A stretch of 64,000 bases of DNA from IMG/VR virus record IMGVR_UViG_2162886007_000107, positions 172,431-236,430 of that record; one strand, given 5' to 3'. Made by a program: the position numbers and the translations under genes. Positions 12,007 to 19,528 of the stretch are shown here, in pieces. How positions within the stretch are numbered: position 1 is the stretch's first letter; every line of letters begins with the position of its first letter. The notes beneath the pieces were generated by a model. That model worked only from the letters and a program-made list of their open reading frames with translations. It had not been told where the DNA came from and ran no database searches.

Positions 12007-13305
12007 GTGTCTGATAAGAATGTAACGAATTCGAACGACCCTGTTGAAAAGATCGAATATTTCGAGGACAAGCTCCACAGTGAGCATCATGTCCACACTG
12101 GATTCGCCAGCATTGCCAAAGCAGCGGATAACTCGCTGTGTGAGCGTGAAGAACTCGCTCTGGGCGATATGTCCGACAACGACCTGGCAAAGGAAGTGCT
12201 CAAGCTGCAAGAGTACCTGCAACTTCCTAGCGGTATTTATTACGGTGAGCTGCTCAAGGCCATTGTTCACCGGCTGCGTTTCCTGAGCGGTCGTCTGCGC
12301 CACTATGAAGGCAAAGAAGTCTTCGACATGGAAGACCCAACTCCAAATTTGGATGCTGCAAGGAAACGAGTTCAGGATTACCTATCGGGCCTTCCCCCAA
12401 CAAACCTCAACGATATTCTTACTCACCCCGGTGGTGGTGATCCACAGCATTTGGTGGACACTGAAGTTGTTTTCAGCTCTCCTGCAATGGAAGCCTTTGT
12501 TCGTGACAATCCTCAGTTGTTGGAGGTTCGTCTTGGCAAGCTGCGGCCACAAGGTACTTTCCATGGTGGACTGTATTACGCGATAGGGAAACCTAATCTC
12601 GATTTCAATGGCGATGGTGAATTCACCATGCCTAAAGCCGGGGAGGATATTGGTCCTGAGTATAAATACGTTTCTGCTCAGTCCACGCTAAACATGTCTC
12701 CTGAATTGCAGAAACTGATTGCCGACTCAGCGCCAAAGTTTGATGGTTCTACTTTGCGTGATATCGGCACGTCACAGACTGTTCATGTTGAAGTCAGCGG
12801 CCCTGGCGCCGACGATCTGGTTCAGTCGGCTAACCTCAAAGACCAGCCTTATCTAGTAAAGGTTGGCACCATGTTGGCGTACACCCATCCAGTAGGCGGT
12901 CTTCTCGTGAGCGACAATTTCGAGAGGACTCGTCGTGACATTCGTAATACACTGGATGCGCAAGCCGACGTATACCGTCGCACCAAAACCATGTTTGATC
13001 GTCTGTGCTTCTTCCTGGGAATTCAGGATAAAGAAAACCTAGGGGCAATTGCTCACAAGTTAGTCGAGAAACACAACGCCACTGGTGAAGGAGTGTTCGT
13101 AGTACTTCGTGCGGCTGCGCTCATGGACGGTAAAGCATCTCTCGAAGAAGCTGATAAATGCTACTTTGAGTTGCGCGATCTGGTACTGGCTATCAATCCA
13201 GGTTACGGCAAAGAGCCTAAGTACGACGCCAAGAATAGCCACGAGAGTTTCTTCAAAACAATCGTGCTCCCTTTTCCTGAAACTGGTAACGAGGAGAAGC
13301 CATAA
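12007..13305 (+). CDS. hypothetical multidomain protein
   Basis: 432 aa; N-terminal REEL..DMSDNDLA...RLRFLSGR segment shared with 44389. Confidence 0.75.
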   Translation: MSDKNVTNSNDPVEKIEYFEDKLHSEHHVHTGFASIAKAADNSLCEREELALGDMSDNDLAKEVLKLQEYLQLPSGIYYGELLKAIVHRLRFLSGRLRHYEGKEVFDMEDPTPNLDAARKRVQDYLSGLPPTNLNDILTHPGGGDPQHLVDTEVVFSSPAMEAFVRDNPQLLEVRLGKLRPQGTFHGGLYYAIGKPNLDFNGDGEFTMPKAGEDIGPEYKYVSAQSTLNMSPELQKLIADSAPKFDGSTLRDIGTSQTVHVEVSGPGADDLVQSANLKDQPYLVKVGTMLAYTHPVGGLLVSDNFERTRRDIRNTLDAQADVYRRTKTMFDRLCFFLGIQDKENLGAIAHKLVEKHNATGEGVFVVLRAAALMDGKASLEEADKCYFELRDLVLAINPGYGKEPKYDAKNSHESFFKTIVLPFPETGNEEKP

Positions 13306-13655
13306 TGGCTGATATCAACCCTGCTGCTGAACTGCCAAAACGCAATGCGGTTGTTTATCCTGTGGGTCGTGATCCAGAAGGTAAGCAGATCTGGTCTGTA
13401 AGTGTTCTCGGTCATTGCACTCTCAACCGTGCTCTGATGACCGAGATCTCGGCAGACGCCTGCGGAGAAGTAGAAAACGTTGTTTGGGCTACCGAACCTC
13501 CTCTTGTTGATGGGACAACTCTCAACAAGGATTGGTTGGTATGGTGTATGTCTACTCACCACATTGGTGAAGACGAAGCCAGGCACGAAGGCCATCGTCG
13601 ATTGCAGTTCTTTCAGTTCTGCGCCATTGCACGAGAAAGAAGCAATGGACAGTAA
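13305..13655 (+). CDS. hypothetical protein, NPxW-motif family
   Basis: TAATG overlap; LNKDWLVWCM. Confidence 0.7.
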   Translation: MADINPAAELPKRNAVVYPVGRDPEGKQIWSVSVLGHCTLNRALMTEISADACGEVENVVWATEPPLVDGTTLNKDWLVWCMSTHHIGEDEARHEGHRRLQFFQFCAIARERSNGQ

Positions 13656-13950
13656 AGAACCCACCTTGGAAGGTAGCCTTCGCGGTGGAATGAGTAAGTC
13701 CTGGGTGGAGTGGTATCGTGCTCAAGGCTACTCGTTATTGGAAGCTCGTGAAGAAGCCTTACGTCGCCTTGAACTTAAACGCGATAAAGCGGCTGAATTG
13801 GCTTCTAACAAACCGGAACCTTCCCTGCTCAATATTCATGGAAGAAAAAATCCGGAATGGGTGCGGTGGTATCGCGATAAAAATGGGGTAACTTTACTTG
13901 AGGCTTTGAATGCTCAGGTTAGTCGTATTTCTCAACTGAACAAGCAATAA
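13645..13950 (+). CDS. hypothetical protein with two NPxW-motif repeats
   Basis: SWVEWYRAQGYSLLEA and NPEWVRWYRDKNGVTLLEA. Confidence 0.75.
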   Translation: MDSKEPTLEGSLRGGMSKSWVEWYRAQGYSLLEAREEALRRLELKRDKAAELASNKPEPSLLNIHGRKNPEWVRWYRDKNGVTLLEALNAQVSRISQLNKQ

Positions 13951-13958
13951 ATATGCTG

Positions 13959-13993
13959 CTGTCAGGCTCCTCCGGGGGCCTGGCAGTCTTTTC
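13959..13993 (+). terminator. terminator-like hairpin
   Basis: CTGTCAGGCTCC/GGGGCCTGGCAG stem (G-U pairs) followed by TCTTTT. Confidence 0.65.
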
Positions 13994-14013
13994 TGTCAAA
14001 TGGGGGAATTGTT

Positions 14014-14574
14014 ATGCCGGATATGGTTAAAGGTGGGTTAATTGTTGCGTTTGCTGTTGGTCTGTTTTTCTTTTTCCGTTGGCTGATGAAACCGGAACCA
14101 GCGCTCAAGAAACGCGCTGAAGAATTCAATCGTCAATATGAGGAAGCCCAAGGCTACCCAACTGACGAACAACAACAACCGATCTACGACGAGCGTAAAG
14201 AAAAGGTTCGAGATCCAGTACCTGCTTTCCGTGAAGGTTATCCGCAACACCGTACTCGTTCCAACCCTCCTCCTCGCCCTAGTACTCCACCGCCACCTCC
14301 AGGTATGCGTGAAGGCAGTGGTCGTGAAGTACCTCTGACTTCTTCGCGTGATCGTGCTCGTGGTCTGCACCATCATCAACATTCTCGCGTATCCCATGAT
14401 GACAACATGGGTACCGGCGTAATGATGGGTATGATGTTATCCAGTAACAACCACAGCTCTCCTAGCCAGAGTGCGTGCTCTCCTTCACCTTCCTACGACC
14501 GCGACAGTCGTGCGGATGACAATCGTTGCGACGACAATAACAGCAGCTCTTCCAGCAACGATTCGAGTGATTAA
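14014..14574 (+). CDS. membrane-anchored protein with Pro-rich region and Ser/Asp-rich tail
   Basis: N-terminal TM segment; PPPRPSTPPPPP; low-complexity C-terminus. Confidence 0.7.
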   Translation: MPDMVKGGLIVAFAVGLFFFFRWLMKPEPALKKRAEEFNRQYEEAQGYPTDEQQQPIYDERKEKVRDPVPAFREGYPQHRTRSNPPPRPSTPPPPPGMREGSGREVPLTSSRDRARGLHHHQHSRVSHDDNMGTGVMMGMMLSSNNHSSPSQSACSPSPSYDRDSRADDNRCDDNNSSSSSNDSSD

Positions 14575-14579
14575 CCGTC

Positions 14580-14849
14580 ATGGAAAACGATGAAGAGATT
14601 GAAAAGCTCCCGACTGCTGCTAAAGTAATTTTGTGGGTACTGTTTCTTTGTTTGTGCGTGGCTTTGCGTAGTTGTTACGTTGATGCCAGGAAAGTAGCCG
14701 ACGATCCCAATGTTGGGGTGGCTGCCGATCTGAAGCGTTTGAAGATGAGTACTTGTTCTAATGAGTACGACACTCCTCAATGCCGTGAAGATCAGGCTGC
14801 TCGTAGAGCCGAAGCTTACGAAAAAGACAAGCACTTAATGGATAAGTAA
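14580..14849 (+). CDS. small membrane protein, Cx8C-loop family (1)
   Basis: TM followed by CSNEYDTPQC. Confidence 0.7.
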   Translation: MENDEEIEKLPTAAKVILWVLFLCLCVALRSCYVDARKVADDPNVGVAADLKRLKMSTCSNEYDTPQCREDQAARRAEAYEKDKHLMDK

Positions 14850-14851
14850 TT

Positions 14852-15109
14852 ATGTGGGACAGCAGTGGAGGTGGTGGGGTGAGCAATTCAAGTAGGTTGA
14901 ACTGTAAAGAAGGACTCGGCCTTTTGGGTGTGTTTTCCTTTATCGGTGCAATAATTTATGGTGCCTGTTATTTGCAGGATATAGAAAACCAAGATCGTTG
15001 CATGGGTAAATACAACACCTCCGCTTGCTTTGAGCTTAAAGCTAAAGAAGCTAAAGCCAAAGAAGAATACCTGTTAAAGGTTGAGGGACTTCGTAATGGA
15101 AGTAGTTAA
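14852..15109 (+). CDS. small membrane protein, Cx8C-loop family (2)
   Basis: TM followed by CMGKYNTSAC. Confidence 0.7.
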   Translation: MWDSSGGGGVSNSSRLNCKEGLGLLGVFSFIGAIIYGACYLQDIENQDRCMGKYNTSACFELKAKEAKAKEEYLLKVEGLRNGSS

Positions 15110-15203
15110 AATTGTTTTTGCTGTGCTTCTGGTAGTTATGTTTGTGGACCTGGCAGTTGATAGTTTCCGGGAACATCCCACTTGTTGCGAAGAAGATGAT
15201 TAA
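15096..15203 (+). CDS. small hydrophobic peptide (35 aa)
   Basis: Read manually as MEVVKIVFAVLLVVMFVDLAVDSFREHPTCCEEDD; GAGGGA RBS; fills the gap. Confidence 0.5.
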   Translation: MEVVKIVFAVLLVVMFVDLAVDSFREHPTCCEEDD

Positions 15204-15212
15204 GGGGTAGCA

Positions 15213-15452
15213 ATGAAATCTCTGACTCAAGCATCGTTAAAAGACGGTGTGGTCGTATGTTTGAAAATGGTCGTTATGATTACAGCGGCTTTTGCAATTG
15301 TTTTTGGTGCCGAGCATCTGCGTGACCGTATCAAGGATCAACGCGGCGGGTTTAACGACCAGAACTGCGTGGGTAGTTTCAACACTATCCCTTGCCACCA
15401 GATGAAGATCAACCAGCTCCTCAAAGAGCGGGATCTAAAAGGAGTCCAGTAA
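15213..15452 (+). CDS. small membrane protein, Cx8C-loop family (3)
   Basis: TM followed by CVGSFNTIPC. Confidence 0.7.
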   Translation: MKSLTQASLKDGVVVCLKMVVMITAAFAIVFGAEHLRDRIKDQRGGFNDQNCVGSFNTIPCHQMKINQLLKERDLKGVQ

Positions 15453-15733
15453 TGGGCGATTGGTTTAAAAACTGGTGTGGTATAAACAAACCTGTCGTAG
15501 TCGGCATTATTTGTGTCGTCGTGATCGGGGCACCCATTATGTATTGGGTATCTAAAGCAGTGGATAATTTCCAAGCTGCTAACCGGCAGATTATTGCGCG
15601 TAATAACGCAAGTAATTGCCAAGGACAGTGGCGCACTATCGAGTGCTATCAGTTCAAGATTGACCAGCTCAAACTGGAGCAATCCTACCAGGAGGTTCTC
15701 AATGCAAAACAACCTGGTAAAAGCGCCAATTGA
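15452..15733 (+). CDS. small membrane protein, Cx8C-loop family (4)
   Basis: TAATG overlap; TM followed by CQGQWRTIEC. Confidence 0.7.
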   Translation: MGDWFKNWCGINKPVVVGIICVVVIGAPIMYWVSKAVDNFQAANRQIIARNNASNCQGQWRTIECYQFKIDQLKLEQSYQEVLNAKQPGKSAN

Positions 15734-15989
15734 AGGTGAGTATTTAGCCAAGGGCGAGTATTGTCGTGACGAGGTCACCGTTGATATGGCTGACCTATTC
15801 CGAACTGTTATTGTCCATTCAGAAGAATCTTTCTGCCAATGGAAAAAGACAGAAAGCACACCTAAGCCTAAGCCCACTTTCATGAGTAAGGTAAAGGCAA
15901 ACCCTTGGCCGTATGTTTTGTTCTGCATGCAAATGTTCTGGCCAACTGTTTTAGTAGTCTGGTTAATCTTTCGACAGTTCTGGAGATAA
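15702..15989 (+). CDS. small protein with C-terminal TM segment
   Basis: GGAGG RBS before ATG 15702. Confidence 0.6.
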   Translation: MQNNLVKAPIEGEYLAKGEYCRDEVTVDMADLFRTVIVHSEESFCQWKKTESTPKPKPTFMSKVKANPWPYVLFCMQMFWPTVLVVWLIFRQFWR

Positions 15990-15991
15990 CT

Positions 15992-16486
15992 ATGGCAATT
16001 GACATGAGGGAGTTTCCTATGGTAGCTAATACCCTGCCTCCACCTGATGGGTTGGTTGGTCGCGTATATCCGGGTCATCAATACCGGCGTCCGCCTCCAC
16101 CAGCTCCTCCGCCTCCTAAAGGCGGGTTTCATGACGTGCCTTGGCCTCCAGTGCCTCCAAGGCTTGGTGAGAAGACAGATATCATTCCGCCAGCTCCTGT
16201 GAAAAGGCTGGAACTTACTTTGCCTCCACCATGGGAGCGTAAGAAAATGATAGTCAATCGTGAAAAAGAAAAGCCACCCACTCTCATTGCTTGGTTGGGG
16301 CTTATTGTAGGTATTGTTACCTTCAGTTGGCTGATGGCATTGGGTATGGAAAAGCAACAGAAGGATGTTTCCGACTGGGCTAAGGGTTTTGATTATCGTC
16401 ACTGTTGGGGTAAGTTCGACACTCCGGCTTGTCATGAACGCAAGGCTAAAGAAAATGCTGAAGCCTACAAAAATTACAAGGACTAA
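15992..16486 (+). CDS. Pro-rich membrane protein, Cx8C-loop family (5)
   Basis: Poly-Pro N-terminus, TM, then CWGKFDTPAC. Confidence 0.7.
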   Translation: MAIDMREFPMVANTLPPPDGLVGRVYPGHQYRRPPPPAPPPPKGGFHDVPWPPVPPRLGEKTDIIPPAPVKRLELTLPPPWERKKMIVNREKEKPPTLIAWLGLIVGIVTFSWLMALGMEKQQKDVSDWAKGFDYRHCWGKFDTPACHERKAKENAEAYKNYKD

Positions 16487-16489
16487 GTA

Positions 16490-17575
16490 ATGGGCTTTTA
16501 TTTGCCTCTTATTTTGATACCGGCCTTCTTAGTGGCTTTGATCGGAAAGTTCTTCTTTCCGCACAAGATCACTTTGAAGGAGTGGGGGTTGCAAGGACTT
16601 GGTGTGATTATTAGCACCGCTCTTTGCATGGGGATCGTTACCGTGTCTTCTTTCGGTTATAGTTCCGACATCTCCATCTTCAATGGGGAAGTTACTGGTA
16701 AAGACAGTGTTCACGTAAGCTGTAGTCATCAGTATGTGTGCGGGGAAACCTGCCGCACGGAAACTACAACCGACTCCAAGGGCAAGCGTTCTTCTCGTCG
16801 GGTGTGTTCGCCTAAATACTGTGACGAGCACGCCTACGACATCGACTGGGATGTTTATACGACTCTGGGGACGTACACCATTGATCGTGTAGATCGTCGC
16901 GGTACGAGCATGCCAGTGCGTTGGGATTTGGTTAACAATGGAGACCCTGTTTCCAAGAGTGTCATGGTAACCAACTACATGTTACTGGATGAGGATCGGT
17001 TTAAAACCAGTTCTGCTATTCATGCTCGTTTTGCTGAGCAGTTGCCTGCTTATCCTGAGATCTTCAACTACTACATGATTCATCGTGTCATCGTCACATT
17101 CCCTGGCGAGTACGAGAAGATCGGTGACTGGCTTAGCAACCAGTTGAGGAAGGATGGTAAAGAGAAAGAGCTAAACGTCATCCTGGTAGTTACTCGTAAC
17201 CAGCCTGACTATTTCTATGCTCTCATGGAGCACTGGAAAGGCGTTAAGAAGAATGATGTGGTCATCGTCTATGGTGTTGACGAAGAACAGAACGTCACGT
17301 GGGCTCAAGCAATGTCTTGGGCTGAAGGTCAGAACAACCAGGTTATGCTCAAGCAACTTCAGAGCATGACCTACGAACGTAAGTTCGATCAAAAGCTCGT
17401 GGAAGAACAATACGGGCTGATTGTGAAAGAATTCAAACGTGTGCCTAATGAGCACTTTGAATACATGCGTGCCGGCTGGGTTCCTCCGACTTGGATCATT
17501 GTCTTAATGGCTTTGTTCAACCTGGGAACTGCTGTTGGTATTGCATGGTTTGTTATTAAAGAAGACGTCGCCTAA
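16490..17575 (+). CDS. multi-TM membrane protein with Cys-rich loop and TPM-like domain
   Basis: N- and C-terminal TMs; CSHQYVC...C..KYC; HWKGVKKNDVVIVYG. Confidence 0.7.
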   Translation: MGFYLPLILIPAFLVALIGKFFFPHKITLKEWGLQGLGVIISTALCMGIVTVSSFGYSSDISIFNGEVTGKDSVHVSCSHQYVCGETCRTETTTDSKGKRSSRRVCSPKYCDEHAYDIDWDVYTTLGTYTIDRVDRRGTSMPVRWDLVNNGDPVSKSVMVTNYMLLDEDRFKTSSAIHARFAEQLPAYPEIFNYYMIHRVIVTFPGEYEKIGDWLSNQLRKDGKEKELNVILVVTRNQPDYFYALMEHWKGVKKNDVVIVYGVDEEQNVTWAQAMSWAEGQNNQVMLKQLQSMTYERKFDQKLVEEQYGLIVKEFKRVPNEHFEYMRAGWVPPTWIIVLMALFNLGTAVGIAWFVIKEDVA

Positions 17576-17591
17576 TCAAGGAAATGAACGA

Positions 17592-18161
17592 ATGAAAATT
17601 GTCGGTATTGTTTTTGGTGTGCTGCTGGCCTTTGCGGTTGTAGCCGGTGGTTCTGTGTTCCTGGCTTACCAGTCGATGTATGACACCGCGGTAGGCTTCG
17701 AGAACAACATCAAGAAGCTGGACAAGCAAAGTGAAGCTTCGCTGTCGTCCACTACCATCAAGATCCAGAACGCTGTGGGTCTGACCGCTCAATACACCGA
17801 ATCCCTCAAGGAAGTGGTGCGTGCTGCGGTCGAAGGCCGTTACGGTAAGGACGGTAGTAAAGCTACCATGCAGTGGATCCAGGAACAAAATCCGGTTTAC
17901 GATTCGAAAGTGATTCTGAAAGTTCAAGACATCATCGATGGTGGTGGTAGTGAATTCAAGATCACTCAGGATCGCAAGATCGAAGAATGTACCAAATACG
18001 AAACTTCTCGTGATTCCCTGGTTCGTGGCTTCTTCCTGCGCCTGGCTGGCTTCCCGAAGAAAGACGTCGAAGACATGTGTAAAGTGATCTCCGACGCTTC
18101 CACTCGTGAGGCCTTCTCGACTGGTCTGCAAAAACCAGTGATTCAAGCACCAAGCAAGTAA
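17592..18161 (+). CDS. LemA-like membrane-anchored coiled-coil protein
   Basis: N-terminal TM; YDTAVGFENNI and EQNPVYDS...KVQDII...KYE...FFLRLAGFP resemble the LemA pattern. Confidence 0.6.
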   Translation: MKIVGIVFGVLLAFAVVAGGSVFLAYQSMYDTAVGFENNIKKLDKQSEASLSSTTIKIQNAVGLTAQYTESLKEVVRAAVEGRYGKDGSKATMQWIQEQNPVYDSKVILKVQDIIDGGGSEFKITQDRKIEECTKYETSRDSLVRGFFLRLAGFPKKDVEDMCKVISDASTREAFSTGLQKPVIQAPSK

Positions 18162-18172
18162 TACCGCAGTAA

Positions 18173-18212
18173 ACTACCTAGAGGGTCTGGCCCTCTAGGT
18201 AGTATTTATTTT
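18173..18212 (+). terminator. intrinsic terminator
   Basis: ACTACCTAGAGGG/CCCTCTAGGTAGT stem plus ATTTATTTT. Confidence 0.8.
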
Positions 18213-18236
18213 CTTAACCAAAAGAGTACTTTGTTT

Positions 18237-18704
18237 ATGAATGCACTAATACAGCGAGCTAAAGATTACCTTTTTGGTAAAACCACTGTCGAGAAGATCC
18301 CTTCCTACGACAAAGAACAAATCAACAAGGAACTGGCAGTAGAGTTACAAGAAACGCTCAAGGTCGATCTGATCATGCAAGCCAAGACCGTTCCGTTATC
18401 AACGCTGGACGGCAAGCCAAACCCACAATGGGTAAAGATCTTCAAGCTGGGATTCCCCAACCTGCTCGAAGAAGAAATCAAAGCCAAGCAACTGGAACTT
18501 ATCCAGGCGGAAGTTGCAATCATCGATGCCTTCCTCGATAAGGAAGATGTCGAGGTAGATGACAGTTGGATCGACGACCTGAACCCCGAAGTCAAGATGG
18601 ACGACCTGGGTTACTGGCATGTGAAGATCAACGGTCAGTGGTGCGCTATCGCCAGTAGTACGGCAAGCGGCCACTCCATCAGAGACACGTTGTTCAATCG
18701 ATAA
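18237..18704 (+). CDS. hypothetical protein
   Basis: About 155 aa; GKPNPQWVK motif. Confidence 0.7.
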   Translation: MNALIQRAKDYLFGKTTVEKIPSYDKEQINKELAVELQETLKVDLIMQAKTVPLSTLDGKPNPQWVKIFKLGFPNLLEEEIKAKQLELIQAEVAIIDAFLDKEDVEVDDSWIDDLNPEVKMDDLGYWHVKINGQWCAIASSTASGHSIRDTLFNR

Positions 18705-18718
18705 GCAATACCAGGGCA

Positions 18719-18746
18719 CTCCTAACCTCCGCAAGGAGGTTAGGAG
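18719..18746. terminator. hairpin between convergent genes
   Basis: CTCCTAACCTCC-GCAA-GGAGGTTAGGAG. Confidence 0.75.
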
Positions 18747-18769
18747 CATCTGATATATTATTTTTTACT

Positions 18770-19480
18770 TTAGAAAGGTTGTGGGGTGTAATCACCAACA
18801 TATCTGGCAAAGTTAGAAAAACGAATACGTCCGAAGTTACCTGGATAGCAACGGTTCGTGGCGTTAAAGTACCCAAGATACATTTTGGTAACTGTAGGTA
18901 AAGCTTGGGTTTTATTAAAAAGACTTTGTTTGGTGCCGTTAACTGTACCGTTCTCTAAGAGTTGTCTTACTCCATTTAACATTACAAAAAAGTAACTTCC
19001 TTTACGTACCAAAGCCCAGCGATTAAGTTGACCAATTACTTGGGTTTTAGTAGAGCTTGGTCTCCAGATACGAGCATTGTTCCAATCAGAGGCGTTGAAC
19101 TGATTACGTTCTTGGTACCCGCCATCTGTCCAACGGCAACCTATCGGAAAACCTGCGGTATTAGTGATATCCATGAAAAGCTCAGTCGCATAACCTGACT
19201 GGTAAGCGTTCCAAATAGACGACCATTCCAAGGTCCAATTCTGCATAGTCTCTAAATCTAATGCCGTCGGTAATGTAATTAGGACACCAGAGTTAACCGA
19301 AGAAGTTTTAAGAGTGGATTGCCCGTCAATTAAAACAGCGGGGTCTACTTCAGTAGCTGTTTTAATTGCACCTACAACCGTGTCGCTAATCAAATCTTTA
19401 TTTGTAGCGGGGTCGTATAAAAAGAGGACGTCACCAGTTTGGGGTTCTTCTGCCTTGGTACCTCCAAGAAGCTCGATCAT
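18770..19480 (-). CDS. putative virion protein, ConA/LamG-like lectin fold
   Basis: MIELLGG start; WTLEW, LNRWALVRKGSYFFVMLNG and FGRIRFSNFARY are typical of LamG-like domains. Confidence 0.6.
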   Translation of the reverse strand: MIELLGGTKAEEPQTGDVLFLYDPATNKDLISDTVVGAIKTATEVDPAVLIDGQSTLKTSSVNSGVLITLPTALDLETMQNWTLEWSSIWNAYQSGYATELFMDITNTAGFPIGCRWTDGGYQERNQFNASDWNNARIWRPSSTKTQVIGQLNRWALVRKGSYFFVMLNGVRQLLENGTVNGTKQSLFNKTQALPTVTKMYLGYFNATNRCYPGNFGRIRFSNFARYVGDYTPQPF

Positions 19481-19528
19481 GTTATTTCTCACTAGGGTAG
19501 GTATAAATGGGACATCCCATAAAGTTGC

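What the first reader, a model, noticed from the sequence alone, without database searches (positions are those of the whole stretch)
14580..16486. Tandem array of five small membrane proteins carrying a CxGx[FYW]xTxxC loop
Seen: each has one TM segment followed by an exact Cx8C motif: CSNEYDTPQC, CMGKYNTSAC, CVGSFNTIPC, CQGQWRTIEC and CWGKFDTPAC. The rest of each sequence is highly divergent. The array lies in a terminator-bounded block (13959-18212) made up entirely of membrane genes and ending in the TPM-like/LemA-like pair. Inference: periplasmic disulfide-stapled mini-binders, diversified like an allele set, acting in superinfection exclusion, receptor masking or inhibition of an envelope machine. 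I know of no described family with this motif.
Basis: partly seen in the sequence, partly recalled or inferred. Interest (0 to 1): 0.72.

Follow-up and report, generated by a model that had tools for sequence, protein, structure and literature searches.

The report
New phage family of disulfide-hairpin membrane proteins
Five neighbouring genes of an uncultured giant phage encode small inner-membrane proteins of an undescribed family, whose short outward-facing tail is probably a helix-turn-helix hairpin pinned by one disulfide; the family is real, conserved and under selection, but its job in infection is unknown.

Summary
Five + strand genes (W1 to W5) each encode one TM helix, then C-x3-[YFW]-x-T-x2-C, then a charged helix. 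About 2 such motifs are expected by chance in the whole 236-kb genome. Seven occur, five of them in this array.

An exhaustive profile search of 1.84 billion proteins found 74 cluster representatives. Seventy-three are small proteins (64-172 aa) with this architecture. None has a Pfam, PHROG, NCBIfam or PADLOC match. Every context inspected is the same membrane-gene block, on large phage-like contigs or short fragments of it.

AlphaFold2 (pLDDT 83) models a helix-loop-helix hairpin with the two Cys at its base. In 77 of 77 sequences the predicted periplasmic part has exactly two Cys.

The paralogs are old. At least one type forms a well-supported clade with one member per phage. Listed strain differences are 23 synonymous to 3 non-synonymous. 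The conserved loop residues look like helix caps, so the loop looks like scaffold, not a variable binding loop.

Function is untested. My best guess is non-enzymatic, periplasm-facing adaptor or blocker subunits of a phage envelope module. The downstream pair is LemA-like (fair support) and TPM-like (weak support), and the family also occurs without it.

The parts
13958..13987 (+). Hairpin plus T-run (terminator-like) 26 nt before the first gene of the block. The stem is kept with changed bases in relatives L011 and L003.
14014..14574 (+). 'Head' gene, 186 aa. It has an N-terminal TM, a Pro-rich middle and an acidic Ser/Asp-rich tail with two Cys that ends in Asp. It precedes the array in every locus whose upstream side is present.
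   Evidence: weak phrog_10669 match, E 4.6e-4
14580..14849 (+). W1, 89 aa, family member with loop CSNEYDTPQC (no Gly).
   Evidence: ortholog P0046; 3 synonymous, 0 non-synonymous
14852..15109 (+). W2, 85 aa, family member with loop CMGKYNTSAC. This is a core paralog type.
   Evidence: 5 synonymous, 0 non-synonymous
15096..15203 (+). Small ORF of 35 aa: a TM peptide with an acidic tail containing CC. It is not a family member and is absent from relative L011.
   Evidence: GAGGGA ribosome-binding site; status uncertain
15213..15452 (+). W3, 79 aa, family member with loop CVGSFNTIPC. This is the most conserved paralog type, with one ortholog in each of seven loci.
   Evidence: AF2 pLDDT 83; clade support 99/94
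15452..15733 (+). W4, 93 aa, family member with loop CQGQWRTIEC. It is sister to the W3-type clade.
   Evidence: (P0017)
15702..15989 (+). C-tail-anchored protein, 95 aa, not a family member. It is conserved at this position in the window, L003, L005, L007 and L011.
15992..16486 (+). W5, 164 aa. It has a Pro-rich cytoplasmic N-terminus, a TM, and a hairpin with loop CWGKFDTPAC. This type is always the last family member and lies directly before phrog_2087 when the pair is present.
   Evidence: (14 synonymous, 2 non-synonymous)
16490..17575 (+). phrog_2087 membrane protein, 361 aa. It has two N-terminal TM segments, one C-terminal TM segment and a Cys-rich middle. It is only weakly TPM-like.
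   Evidence: (E 5.8e-111)
17592..18161 (+). phrog_1383 protein, 189 aa, with an N-terminal TM and a LemA-like helical domain.
   Evidence: (E 3.5e-59)
18173..18203 (+). Terminator-like hairpin (14 pairs) plus T-run that closes the block.

Best explanation
W1 to W5 are translated genes of an undescribed family of small single-pass inner-membrane proteins. The family was found only in one set of uncultured jumbo phages whose nearest cultured relatives are EL-like phages, from soil, rhizosphere, plant and indoor samples.

Anatomy:
- The N-terminus is cytoplasmic. It is short in most members and long and Pro-rich in the W5 type.
- One TM helix runs on into a periplasmic helix.
- A tight turn (G, aromatic, T, often P) leads into a second charged helix of about 20 residues.
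- The two invariant Cys sit at the end of the first helix and in the first turn of the second. A disulfide made in the periplasm would staple a hairpin of about 45 residues.
- The conserved loop residues read as helix-capping and packing residues. The loop would then be scaffold, and any specificity would lie on the variable helix faces. This is inference from established helix-capping rules.

Gene context: three to seven old, diverged paralogs are co-transcribed with two other conserved membrane proteins. These are a Pro-rich 'head' protein and a C-tail-anchored protein. A mobile LemA-like/phrog_2087 pair often follows.

Inferred function, not shown: they are non-enzymatic, periplasm-facing adaptor or blocker subunits. 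They would bind each other or host envelope proteins at the inner membrane and so alter the envelope of the infected cell. Exclusion of other phages or protection of the envelope are examples.
For: Real family:
- The motif clusters far above chance.
- 74 cluster representatives had E <= 1e-3 among 1.84e9 proteins. Seventy-three are 64-172 aa with a TM and the motif; the other (P0079, 1744 aa) had no aligned stretch.
- The logo from 77 sequences has C, T (74/77), an aromatic residue (Y, F or W, 74/77) and G (56/77).

Coding and selection:
- The W genes show 23 synonymous to 3 non-synonymous differences against strains in other metagenomes.
- Ribosome-binding sites and coupled start and stop codons are present.

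Fold: AF2 with the 77-sequence alignment gives pLDDT 83, with helix 8-51, loop 52-58 and helix 59-78. pLDDT is 90-96 over the hairpin.

Topology and disulfide:
- W5-type N-termini reach 108 aa without a signal peptide, and flank charges favour N-in.
- The predicted ectodomain has exactly two Cys in 77 of 77 sequences. All 47 other Cys lie in the TM or N-terminal part.

Conserved block: it recurs in 11 other loci.

Old paralogs: the W3-type clade (support 99/94) has one member per phage. The W5-type clade has support 88/91.
Against: - No experiment bears on this. Topology, disulfide and fold are all predictions.
- K+R counts alone do not separate the two TM flanks.
- The complex prediction for W2+W5+W3 gave no answer, so nothing shows that the paralogs bind each other.
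- Relative L008 carries a W5-type gene with the hairpin deleted in frame, so the hairpin is not always needed.
- No host target is known, and the host itself is unknown.
Confidence: 0.45

Rival explanations
1. Lysis control. The proteins act like i-spanins, holins or antiholins: type II membrane proteins whose periplasmic helices and Cys take part in envelope disruption or its timing.
For: - The predicted N-in/C-out topology and periplasmic helices with Cys recall Rz-type i-spanins and T4 RI (my own knowledge).
- No holin or spanin lies next to the endolysin-like gene. The rest of the genome was not searched for them.
Against: - No lipoprotein partner was found in the block. The only lipobox-like ORF is a 29-aa out-of-frame ORF inside phrog_2087.
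- The ectodomain after the TM is only about 36-63 residues and folds back on itself, so it is too short to span the periplasm.
- Three to seven paralogs are not expected for a lysis function.
- The only endolysin-like gene found (genome 30952-31860) is about 155 kb away.
- The family is absent from EL.
Confidence: 0.12
2. Dedicated accessory subunits of the LemA-like/phrog_2087 pair. The hairpins would dock on the Cys-rich outward-facing domains of those two proteins.
For: - The W5-type gene lies directly before phrog_2087, with 0-4 nt between stop and start, in the window, L003, L005, L011, L017 and L018. L008 keeps the position but its W5-type gene has lost the hairpin.
- Both pair proteins carry conserved Cys and predicted outward-facing domains.
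Against: - L007, L009 and L016 have 3-7 family members and no pair.
- The pair occurs in 489 phage records, including T5-like phages and Erwinia and Serratia jumbo phages. Two records checked (SA002, KKP_3711) have no family member.
Confidence: 0.1
3. One reading: an allele-like, fast-diversifying set of loop-based mini-binders for superinfection exclusion or receptor masking.
For: - Overall identity between paralogs is low, 10-30%.
- Copy number varies from 3 to 7 between phages.
- The proteins probably face the periplasm.
Against: - The loop is the most conserved part.
- The W3 paralog type is orthologous across seven phage loci.
- Strain-level changes are almost all synonymous.
Confidence: 0.1
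4. The C-terminus is cytoplasmic and the Cys pair, with the frequent His that follows it, binds a metal, perhaps across a dimer.
For: - K+R counts are similar on both TM flanks.
- His follows the second Cys in 37 of 77 sequences.
- The tail helix is highly charged.
Against: - The His is not conserved: Leu, Phe or Arg take its place in 37 of 77.
- Long Pro- and Arg-rich N-termini would have to cross the membrane without a signal peptide.
- Extra Cys are strictly excluded from this domain but common in the TM, which fits an oxidising compartment.
Confidence: 0.07
5. Chance ORFs or non-coding sequence. For example, the real gene could be the 365-aa antisense ORF at 15338-16435.
For: A long mechanical ORF exists on the minus strand.
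Against: - The strain differences that fall in the + strand genes are mostly at third codon positions and synonymous.
- The family is conserved in 73 clusters with the same architecture.
- The genes are syntenic in many loci.
Confidence: 0.01

Closest known systems
i-spanins (lambda Rz, T4 PseT.3); comparison from my own knowledge
   Same: They are phage-encoded type II inner-membrane proteins. They have periplasmic alpha-helices and functionally important periplasmic Cys.
   Different: - Spanin ectodomains are long coiled coils that reach an outer-membrane lipoprotein partner, and their disulfides link subunits.
- Here the ectodomain is a hairpin of about 45 residues with one probable internal disulfide.
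- No lipoprotein partner was found, there are 3-7 paralogs, and the block is far from the endolysin.
T4 RI antiholin, Imm and Spackle: small envelope-directed phage proteins; comparison from my own knowledge
   Same: They are small phage accessory proteins that act in the inner membrane or periplasm without enzymatic activity. They control lysis timing or block superinfection.
   Different: - No sequence relationship was found: none of the W proteins matched any Pfam family at E <= 1.
- Those are single-copy genes of T-even phages with other folds.
- No functional data exist here.
Disulfide-stapled helix-loop-helix proteins of the mitochondrial intermembrane space (small Tims with twin Cx3C; CHCH proteins with twin Cx9C); from my own knowledge
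   Same: They are very small helical hairpins held together by disulfides formed in an oxidising compartment, the counterpart of the periplasm.
   Different: - Those have two Cys pairs, one Cys of each pair on each helix, and they are soluble.
- This family has a single Cx8C that spans the turn, and it is membrane-anchored.
- The likeness is structural only; no homology is implied.
Bacterial LemA/TPM-type gene pairs (relevant to the two downstream genes only)
   Same: - The 189-aa protein groups in the ESM Atlas with viral clusters named LemA family. One near cluster has Pfam LemA in 11% of its members. The structural TM-score of 0.86 was measured from the model of the best-matching cluster, not of this protein.
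- It is paired with a larger multi-TM protein.
   Different: - Neither protein reaches Pfam LemA or TPM at E <= 1.
- The 361-aa protein matches TPM clusters only at TM 0.30-0.46 over part of its length.
- AFDB hits are unnamed membrane proteins.

Membership tests
New Cx8C-hairpin family (defined here) | One TM helix, then 8-35 residues, then C-x3-[YFWH]-x-T-x2-C, then a charged helix of 13-37 residues that ends the protein; no other Cys after the TM. | tested here: met
   W1 to W5 all fit. Seventy-three cluster representatives fit.
i-spanin (Rz-like) | Type II (N-in/C-out) inner-membrane topology | tested here: inconclusive
   Predicted from flank charge, long N-termini and Cys distribution. 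There is no experiment.
i-spanin (Rz-like) | Long periplasmic coiled-coil domain able to span the periplasm | tested here: not met
   The ectodomain is about 36-63 residues and is modelled as a folded-back hairpin.
i-spanin (Rz-like) | Cognate o-spanin lipoprotein gene, embedded, overlapping or adjacent | tested here: not met
   A lipobox scan of 13900-18300 on both strands found only a 29-aa out-of-frame ORF inside phrog_2087.
i-spanin (Rz-like) | Location in a lysis cassette with endolysin or holin | tested here: not met
   The only endolysin-like ORF found (PG_binding_1) is at genome 30952-31860, about 155 kb away. No SLT or Phage_lysozyme domain was found.
Hok/Gef, T4 Imm, T4 RI and other Pfam families of small membrane proteins | Match to the family HMM | tested here: not met
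   W1, W2, W3 and W5 had no Pfam match at E <= 1; W4 had one far below cut-off (Sensor, E 0.12). No useful PHROG, NCBIfam or PADLOC match.
Twin Cx9C (CHCH) and twin Cx3C (small Tim) hairpins | Two Cys pairs, one Cys of each pair on each helix | tested here: not met
   There is a single Cys pair, and no further Cys in the ectodomain of any of 77 sequences.
Type IV pilin-like (N_methyl) proteins | Prepilin cleavage and methylation motif at the N-terminus | tested here: not met
   No Pfam N_methyl match. The Atlas shape match at TM 0.57 covers only the long helix.
LemA (PF04011), for 17592-18161 | Match to the Pfam LemA HMM, or a shared fold | tested here: inconclusive
   No Pfam match at E <= 1. 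Atlas feature score 0.96-0.97 to viral clusters, one with PF04011 in 11% of members. TM 0.86 to clusters named LemA family, measured from the model of the best-matching cluster, not of this protein.
TPM domain (PF04536), for 16490-17575 | Match to the Pfam TPM HMM, or a shared fold | tested here: inconclusive
   No Pfam match. Atlas TM 0.30-0.46 over at most residues 61-361. My AF2 model was poor, pLDDT 58. AFDB hits carry no TPM name.

The most novel reading that the evidence does not exclude
The hairpin paralogs, the Pro-rich head protein and the tail-anchored protein, with or without the LemA-like pair, assemble into a multi-subunit, periplasm-facing inner-membrane complex of a kind not yet described for phages. 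It would be built from disulfide-stapled helical hairpins and would shield or rewire the envelope of cells infected by a jumbo phage that is probably nucleus-forming.
Probability: 0.15. Interest if true: 0.75.

Novelty: new variant of a known kind. Interest (0 to 1): 0.45.

Why it matters
Small membrane proteins are the least understood part of phage genomes, yet the few that have been studied control lysis timing, superinfection exclusion and envelope takeover. This finding offers:
- a sharply defined, easily recognised family, with about 73 sequence clusters and a simple signature;
- a confident fold prediction;
- clear comparative evidence for a periplasmic disulfide;
- a conserved operon context in relatives of nucleus-forming jumbo phages, whose membrane biology is little explored.

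It gives concrete, cheap experiments: topology fusions, DsbA dependence, interaction mapping and exclusion assays. The limits are that the phage is uncultured, its host is unknown and the family is narrow.

Tried and rejected
Searches that found nothing or gave no usable answer:
- megablast and blastn of the block against 50,697 GenBank phage records gave nothing useful.
- tblastn of a W3-type and a W5-type protein against the same records found no homolog.
- Pfam, PHROG, NCBIfam and PADLOC gave no useful match for the small proteins.
- PDB sequence searches for the two downstream proteins gave only chance-level hits.
- Foldseek of the W3 model against the PDB gave 0 hits. The Atlas shape search matched only long single helices. 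The Atlas feature search for W2 gave nothing above chance level.
- The complex prediction for W2 + W5 C-terminal part + W3 gave 'no answer' and counts neither way.
- The AF2 model of phrog_2087 from 6 sequences was poor (pLDDT 58), so its AFDB search is of little value.
- Three literature searches on LemA/TPM in phages and on chimallivirus membrane proteins found nothing relevant.
- The upstream 432-aa gene has no homolog in GenBank phages, so synteny with EL could not be used.

Readings rejected or left weak:
- The antisense 365-aa ORF is not the real gene.
- A lipoprotein partner is not present.
- The block is not a lysis cassette.
- An RNA-seq library from a plant metagenome holds short contigs of the block, but DNA carry-over cannot be excluded and no silent control stretch was laid. 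This is not evidence of transcription.
Full report
**The observation**

ORF listing of 13000-19500 shows the five + strand ORFs with the loops exactly as quoted. After checking start codons and ribosome-binding sites, the genes are as follows:
- W1 14580-14849
- W2 14852-15109
- W3 15213-15452
- W4 15452-15733
- W5 15992-16486

The window is the last 64 kb of a single-contig virus record of 236,430 bp. In the six-frame translation of that whole genome, C-x3-[FYW]-x-T-x2-C occurs 7 times, 5 of them in this array. Composition predicts 1.9 and 20 shuffles give a mean of 2.1. The version with Gly occurs 4 times against 0.1 expected. W1 lacks the Gly.

The array is interrupted by two other membrane ORFs: a 35-aa TM peptide (15096-15203) and a C-tail-anchored protein (15702-15989). 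Strong hairpin-plus-T-run sites lie at 13958-13987 and 18173-18203. Every ORF between them has a predicted TM segment.

**A real family**

None of the small proteins has a useful match in Pfam, PHROGs, NCBIfam or PADLOC.

A first alignment search found related proteins on other very large contigs. I fetched their loci and built a 25-member alignment. I then ran it as a profile against all 1.84 billion cluster representatives.
- Seventy-four had E <= 1e-3 and 22 had E <= 1e-10.
- One 1744-aa hit had no aligned stretch. The other 73 are proteins of 64-172 aa with one TM segment and the Cys loop.

A motif-centred logo of 77 sequences reads [ND]-K-x-[NH]-C-[VLT]-G-[KE]-[YF]-[DN]-T-[PIV]-x-C-[HL]-[QE]-x-[KR], followed by about 20 charged helical residues. 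Both Cys are invariant. T is present in 74 of 77, an aromatic residue (Y, F or W) in 74 and G in 56.

tblastn of two conserved members against 50,697 GenBank phage records found nothing. A profile search of the EL, SA002 and KKP_3711 records and of a 437-kb viral contig also found nothing.

**Context is constant**

I inspected eleven other loci: L003, L005/L006, L007, L008, L009, L011, L012, L014, L016, L017 and L018. Where enough of the contig is present, the order is the same:
1. A 'head' protein with an N-terminal TM, a Pro-rich middle and an acidic Ser/Asp tail (alignment).
2. Family members, 3 to 7 in all counting the last one below.
3. Usually a C-tail-anchored protein.
4. A last family member of the W5 type, mostly with a Pro-rich N-terminus.
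5. Optionally phrog_2087 plus phrog_1383.

L007, L009 and L016 have the family but not that pair. Conversely, the pair occurs in 489 phage records, including T5-like phages and Erwinia and Serratia jumbo phages. The two inspected, SA002 and KKP_3711, have no family member nearby or anywhere in the record. The family therefore does not depend on the pair, which behaves as a mobile module.

In L008 the W5-type gene has an in-frame deletion of the whole hairpin.

**Fold, topology, disulfide**

AlphaFold2 on W3 with the 77-sequence alignment gives mean pLDDT 83, and 90-96 over the C-terminal 30 residues. The model has helix 8-51 (the TM running on into the periplasmic linker), loop 52-58 and helix 59-78. 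The Cys are residues 52 and 61, the end of helix 1 and the first turn of helix 2, so they are placed to cross-link the hairpin. I could not measure the distance because the coordinates are not exposed.

By established helix-capping rules (my own knowledge), four conserved positions have structural readings:
- the Gly two residues after the first Cys fits a C-cap;
- the Thr fits an N-cap;
- the frequent Pro fits position N1 of the second helix;
- the aromatic residue fits a packing staple.

The conserved loop is therefore more likely scaffold than a binding loop.

Evidence on topology:
- W5-type members carry up to 108 N-terminal Pro- and Arg-rich residues with no signal peptide.
- The mean net charge of the 15-residue flanks is +1.5 on the N side and about 0 on the C side. 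K+R counts alone are similar on both sides.
- Most telling, the part after the TM has exactly two Cys in 77 of 77 sequences. All 47 additional Cys lie in the TM (42) or the N-terminus (5). That pattern is expected for a domain folding in an oxidising compartment.

**Evolution**

A maximum-likelihood tree of 32 members from 9 loci gives these groupings:
- The W3 type forms a clade with one member from each of seven loci (support 99/94).
- W4 is its sister (99/96).
- A W5-type group has support 88/91.
- W2 pairs with its L011 counterpart (93/95).

The paralogs therefore predate the divergence of these phages and are kept as distinct types.

Contigs from other metagenomes that carry 95-99% identical copies differ from the window mostly at third codon positions. 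Among the differences listed, the W genes have 23 synonymous and 3 non-synonymous changes. The list was truncated to the best supported. This is purifying selection in the annotated frames. It shows the genes are translated and speaks against allele-like diversification. It also rules out the 365-aa antisense ORF as the real gene.

**Genome and neighbours**

The closest cultured relatives are EL-like Pseudomonas phages, and they are distant. A 1193-aa tail-fibre-like protein is 53% identical, and the C-terminal fifth of another protein is about 40% identical.

The genome encodes a divergent tubulin-like ORF, which fits a relative of nucleus-forming phages. I did not test for chimallin.

The sample types holding it are soil, rhizosphere, plant and indoor metagenomes.

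The only endolysin-like ORF found (PG_binding_1) is at genome 30952-31860. That is about 155 kb from the block, and it has no holin or spanin beside it.

phrog_1383 groups with viral clusters named LemA family in the ESM Atlas. The TM-score of 0.86 comes from the model of the best-matching cluster, and one near cluster has PF04011 in 11% of members. phrog_2087 resembles TPM clusters only weakly, at TM 0.30-0.46. My own model of it was poor, and AFDB gave unnamed membrane proteins.

The upstream hairpin is conserved with changed stem bases in L011 and L003. It is absent in L005, L007, L008 and L012, where the block simply continues an operon.

**Mechanism**

Shown or strongly supported by comparison:
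- a translated, selected, clade-restricted family;
- a single TM;
- a C-terminal helix-loop-helix hairpin, as a prediction;
- a Cys pair with the signature of a periplasmic disulfide;
- a conserved membrane-gene operon.

Inferred: the proteins have no room for catalysis, so they most likely act by binding. They could bind each other and the head and tail-anchored proteins, which would make a hetero-oligomeric inner-membrane module. Alternatively they could bind host envelope proteins, as blockers or adaptors that serve exclusion or envelope protection. I cannot separate these two readings. The one complex prediction gave no answer.

The rivals are weighed in their own sections:
- lysis control;
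- a dedicated partner of the LemA-like pair;
- allele-like binders;
- a cytoplasmic metal site.

**Comparison and novelty**

The family works most like other small envelope-directed phage proteins, such as i-spanins and T4 RI, Imm and Spackle. It fails the tested defining features of spanins and matches no family model. Its hairpin recalls the disulfide-stapled helical hairpins of the mitochondrial intermembrane space, but with a single Cys pair and a membrane anchor.

I rate it a new family within a known broad kind, small phage membrane effectors. Its function is open.

Noticed in passing
window 15096-15203 (+): A 35-aa ORF with a good ribosome-binding site. It encodes a TM peptide with an acidic tail containing two adjacent Cys, and it sits between W2 and W3. 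It is absent from the close relative L011. Strain differences are 2 synonymous and 1 non-synonymous.
   Followed up: partly
window 16490-18161; L001, L002 and 489 phage records: The phrog_2087 / phrog_1383 (LemA-like) membrane pair is a widespread mobile module. It occurs in T5-like phages, where it sits among tRNA genes, and in Erwinia, Serratia and Salmonella jumbo phages and others. Both proteins have conserved Cys in predicted outward-facing domains. Its function is unknown.
   Followed up: partly
L008 5861-6157: The W5-type gene of this 242-kb relative has an in-frame deletion of about 24 residues. The deletion removes exactly the Cys loop and most of the tail helix, and keeps the Pro-rich N-terminus, the TM and the last residues.
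   Followed up: no
window 14014-14574 and 15992-16486: The head protein and W5 share a cytoplasmic motif: Y-P-[GQ]-H, a few residues, Arg, then a run of Pro. The motif is also seen in L003 and L016. It hints at a common cytoplasmic partner.
   Followed up: no
window about 13700-13950 and 18237-18704; L007 6538-7122; L011 4850-5155: Small soluble proteins flanking the block carry repeats of an N-P-x-W-[VL]-x-W-[YF] type helix motif. This is another uncharacterised family abundant in this phage clade.
   Followed up: no
window 13958-13987: The terminator-like hairpin ends 26 nt before the head gene's ATG, with no room for a sigma-70-type promoter. Its stem is kept with changed bases in L011 and L003. 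It may attenuate or process a longer transcript and need not be a simple operon boundary.
   Followed up: partly
family-wide (alignment A4): Twenty-one of 77 members end in Lys, against a Lys frequency of 16% in the preceding eight residues (binomial p about 0.01, not corrected for relatedness). This is a faint echo of Lpp, whose C-terminal Lys is linked to peptidoglycan. It is probably compositional.
   Followed up: partly
genome G000:C1 64706-65143, 30952-31860 and 18283-18447: A divergent tubulin-like ORF of 348 aa, an endolysin-like ORF with a PG_binding_1 segment (303 aa), and a glycoside hydrolase 19 segment inside a 2649-aa ORF that is probably a virion-associated lysin.
   Followed up: partly
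window 16989 (+), inside phrog_2087: A 29-aa out-of-frame ORF with a lipobox-like L-S-S-C. It is too short and too hydrophobic after the Cys for an o-spanin, so it is probably chance.
   Followed up: no
run X4 (plant metagenome RNA-seq) on window 13962-17970: Eight short contigs, 95-99% identical, from a transcriptomic library cover parts of the block. This may be transcription or DNA carry-over. No control stretch could be laid.
   Followed up: partly
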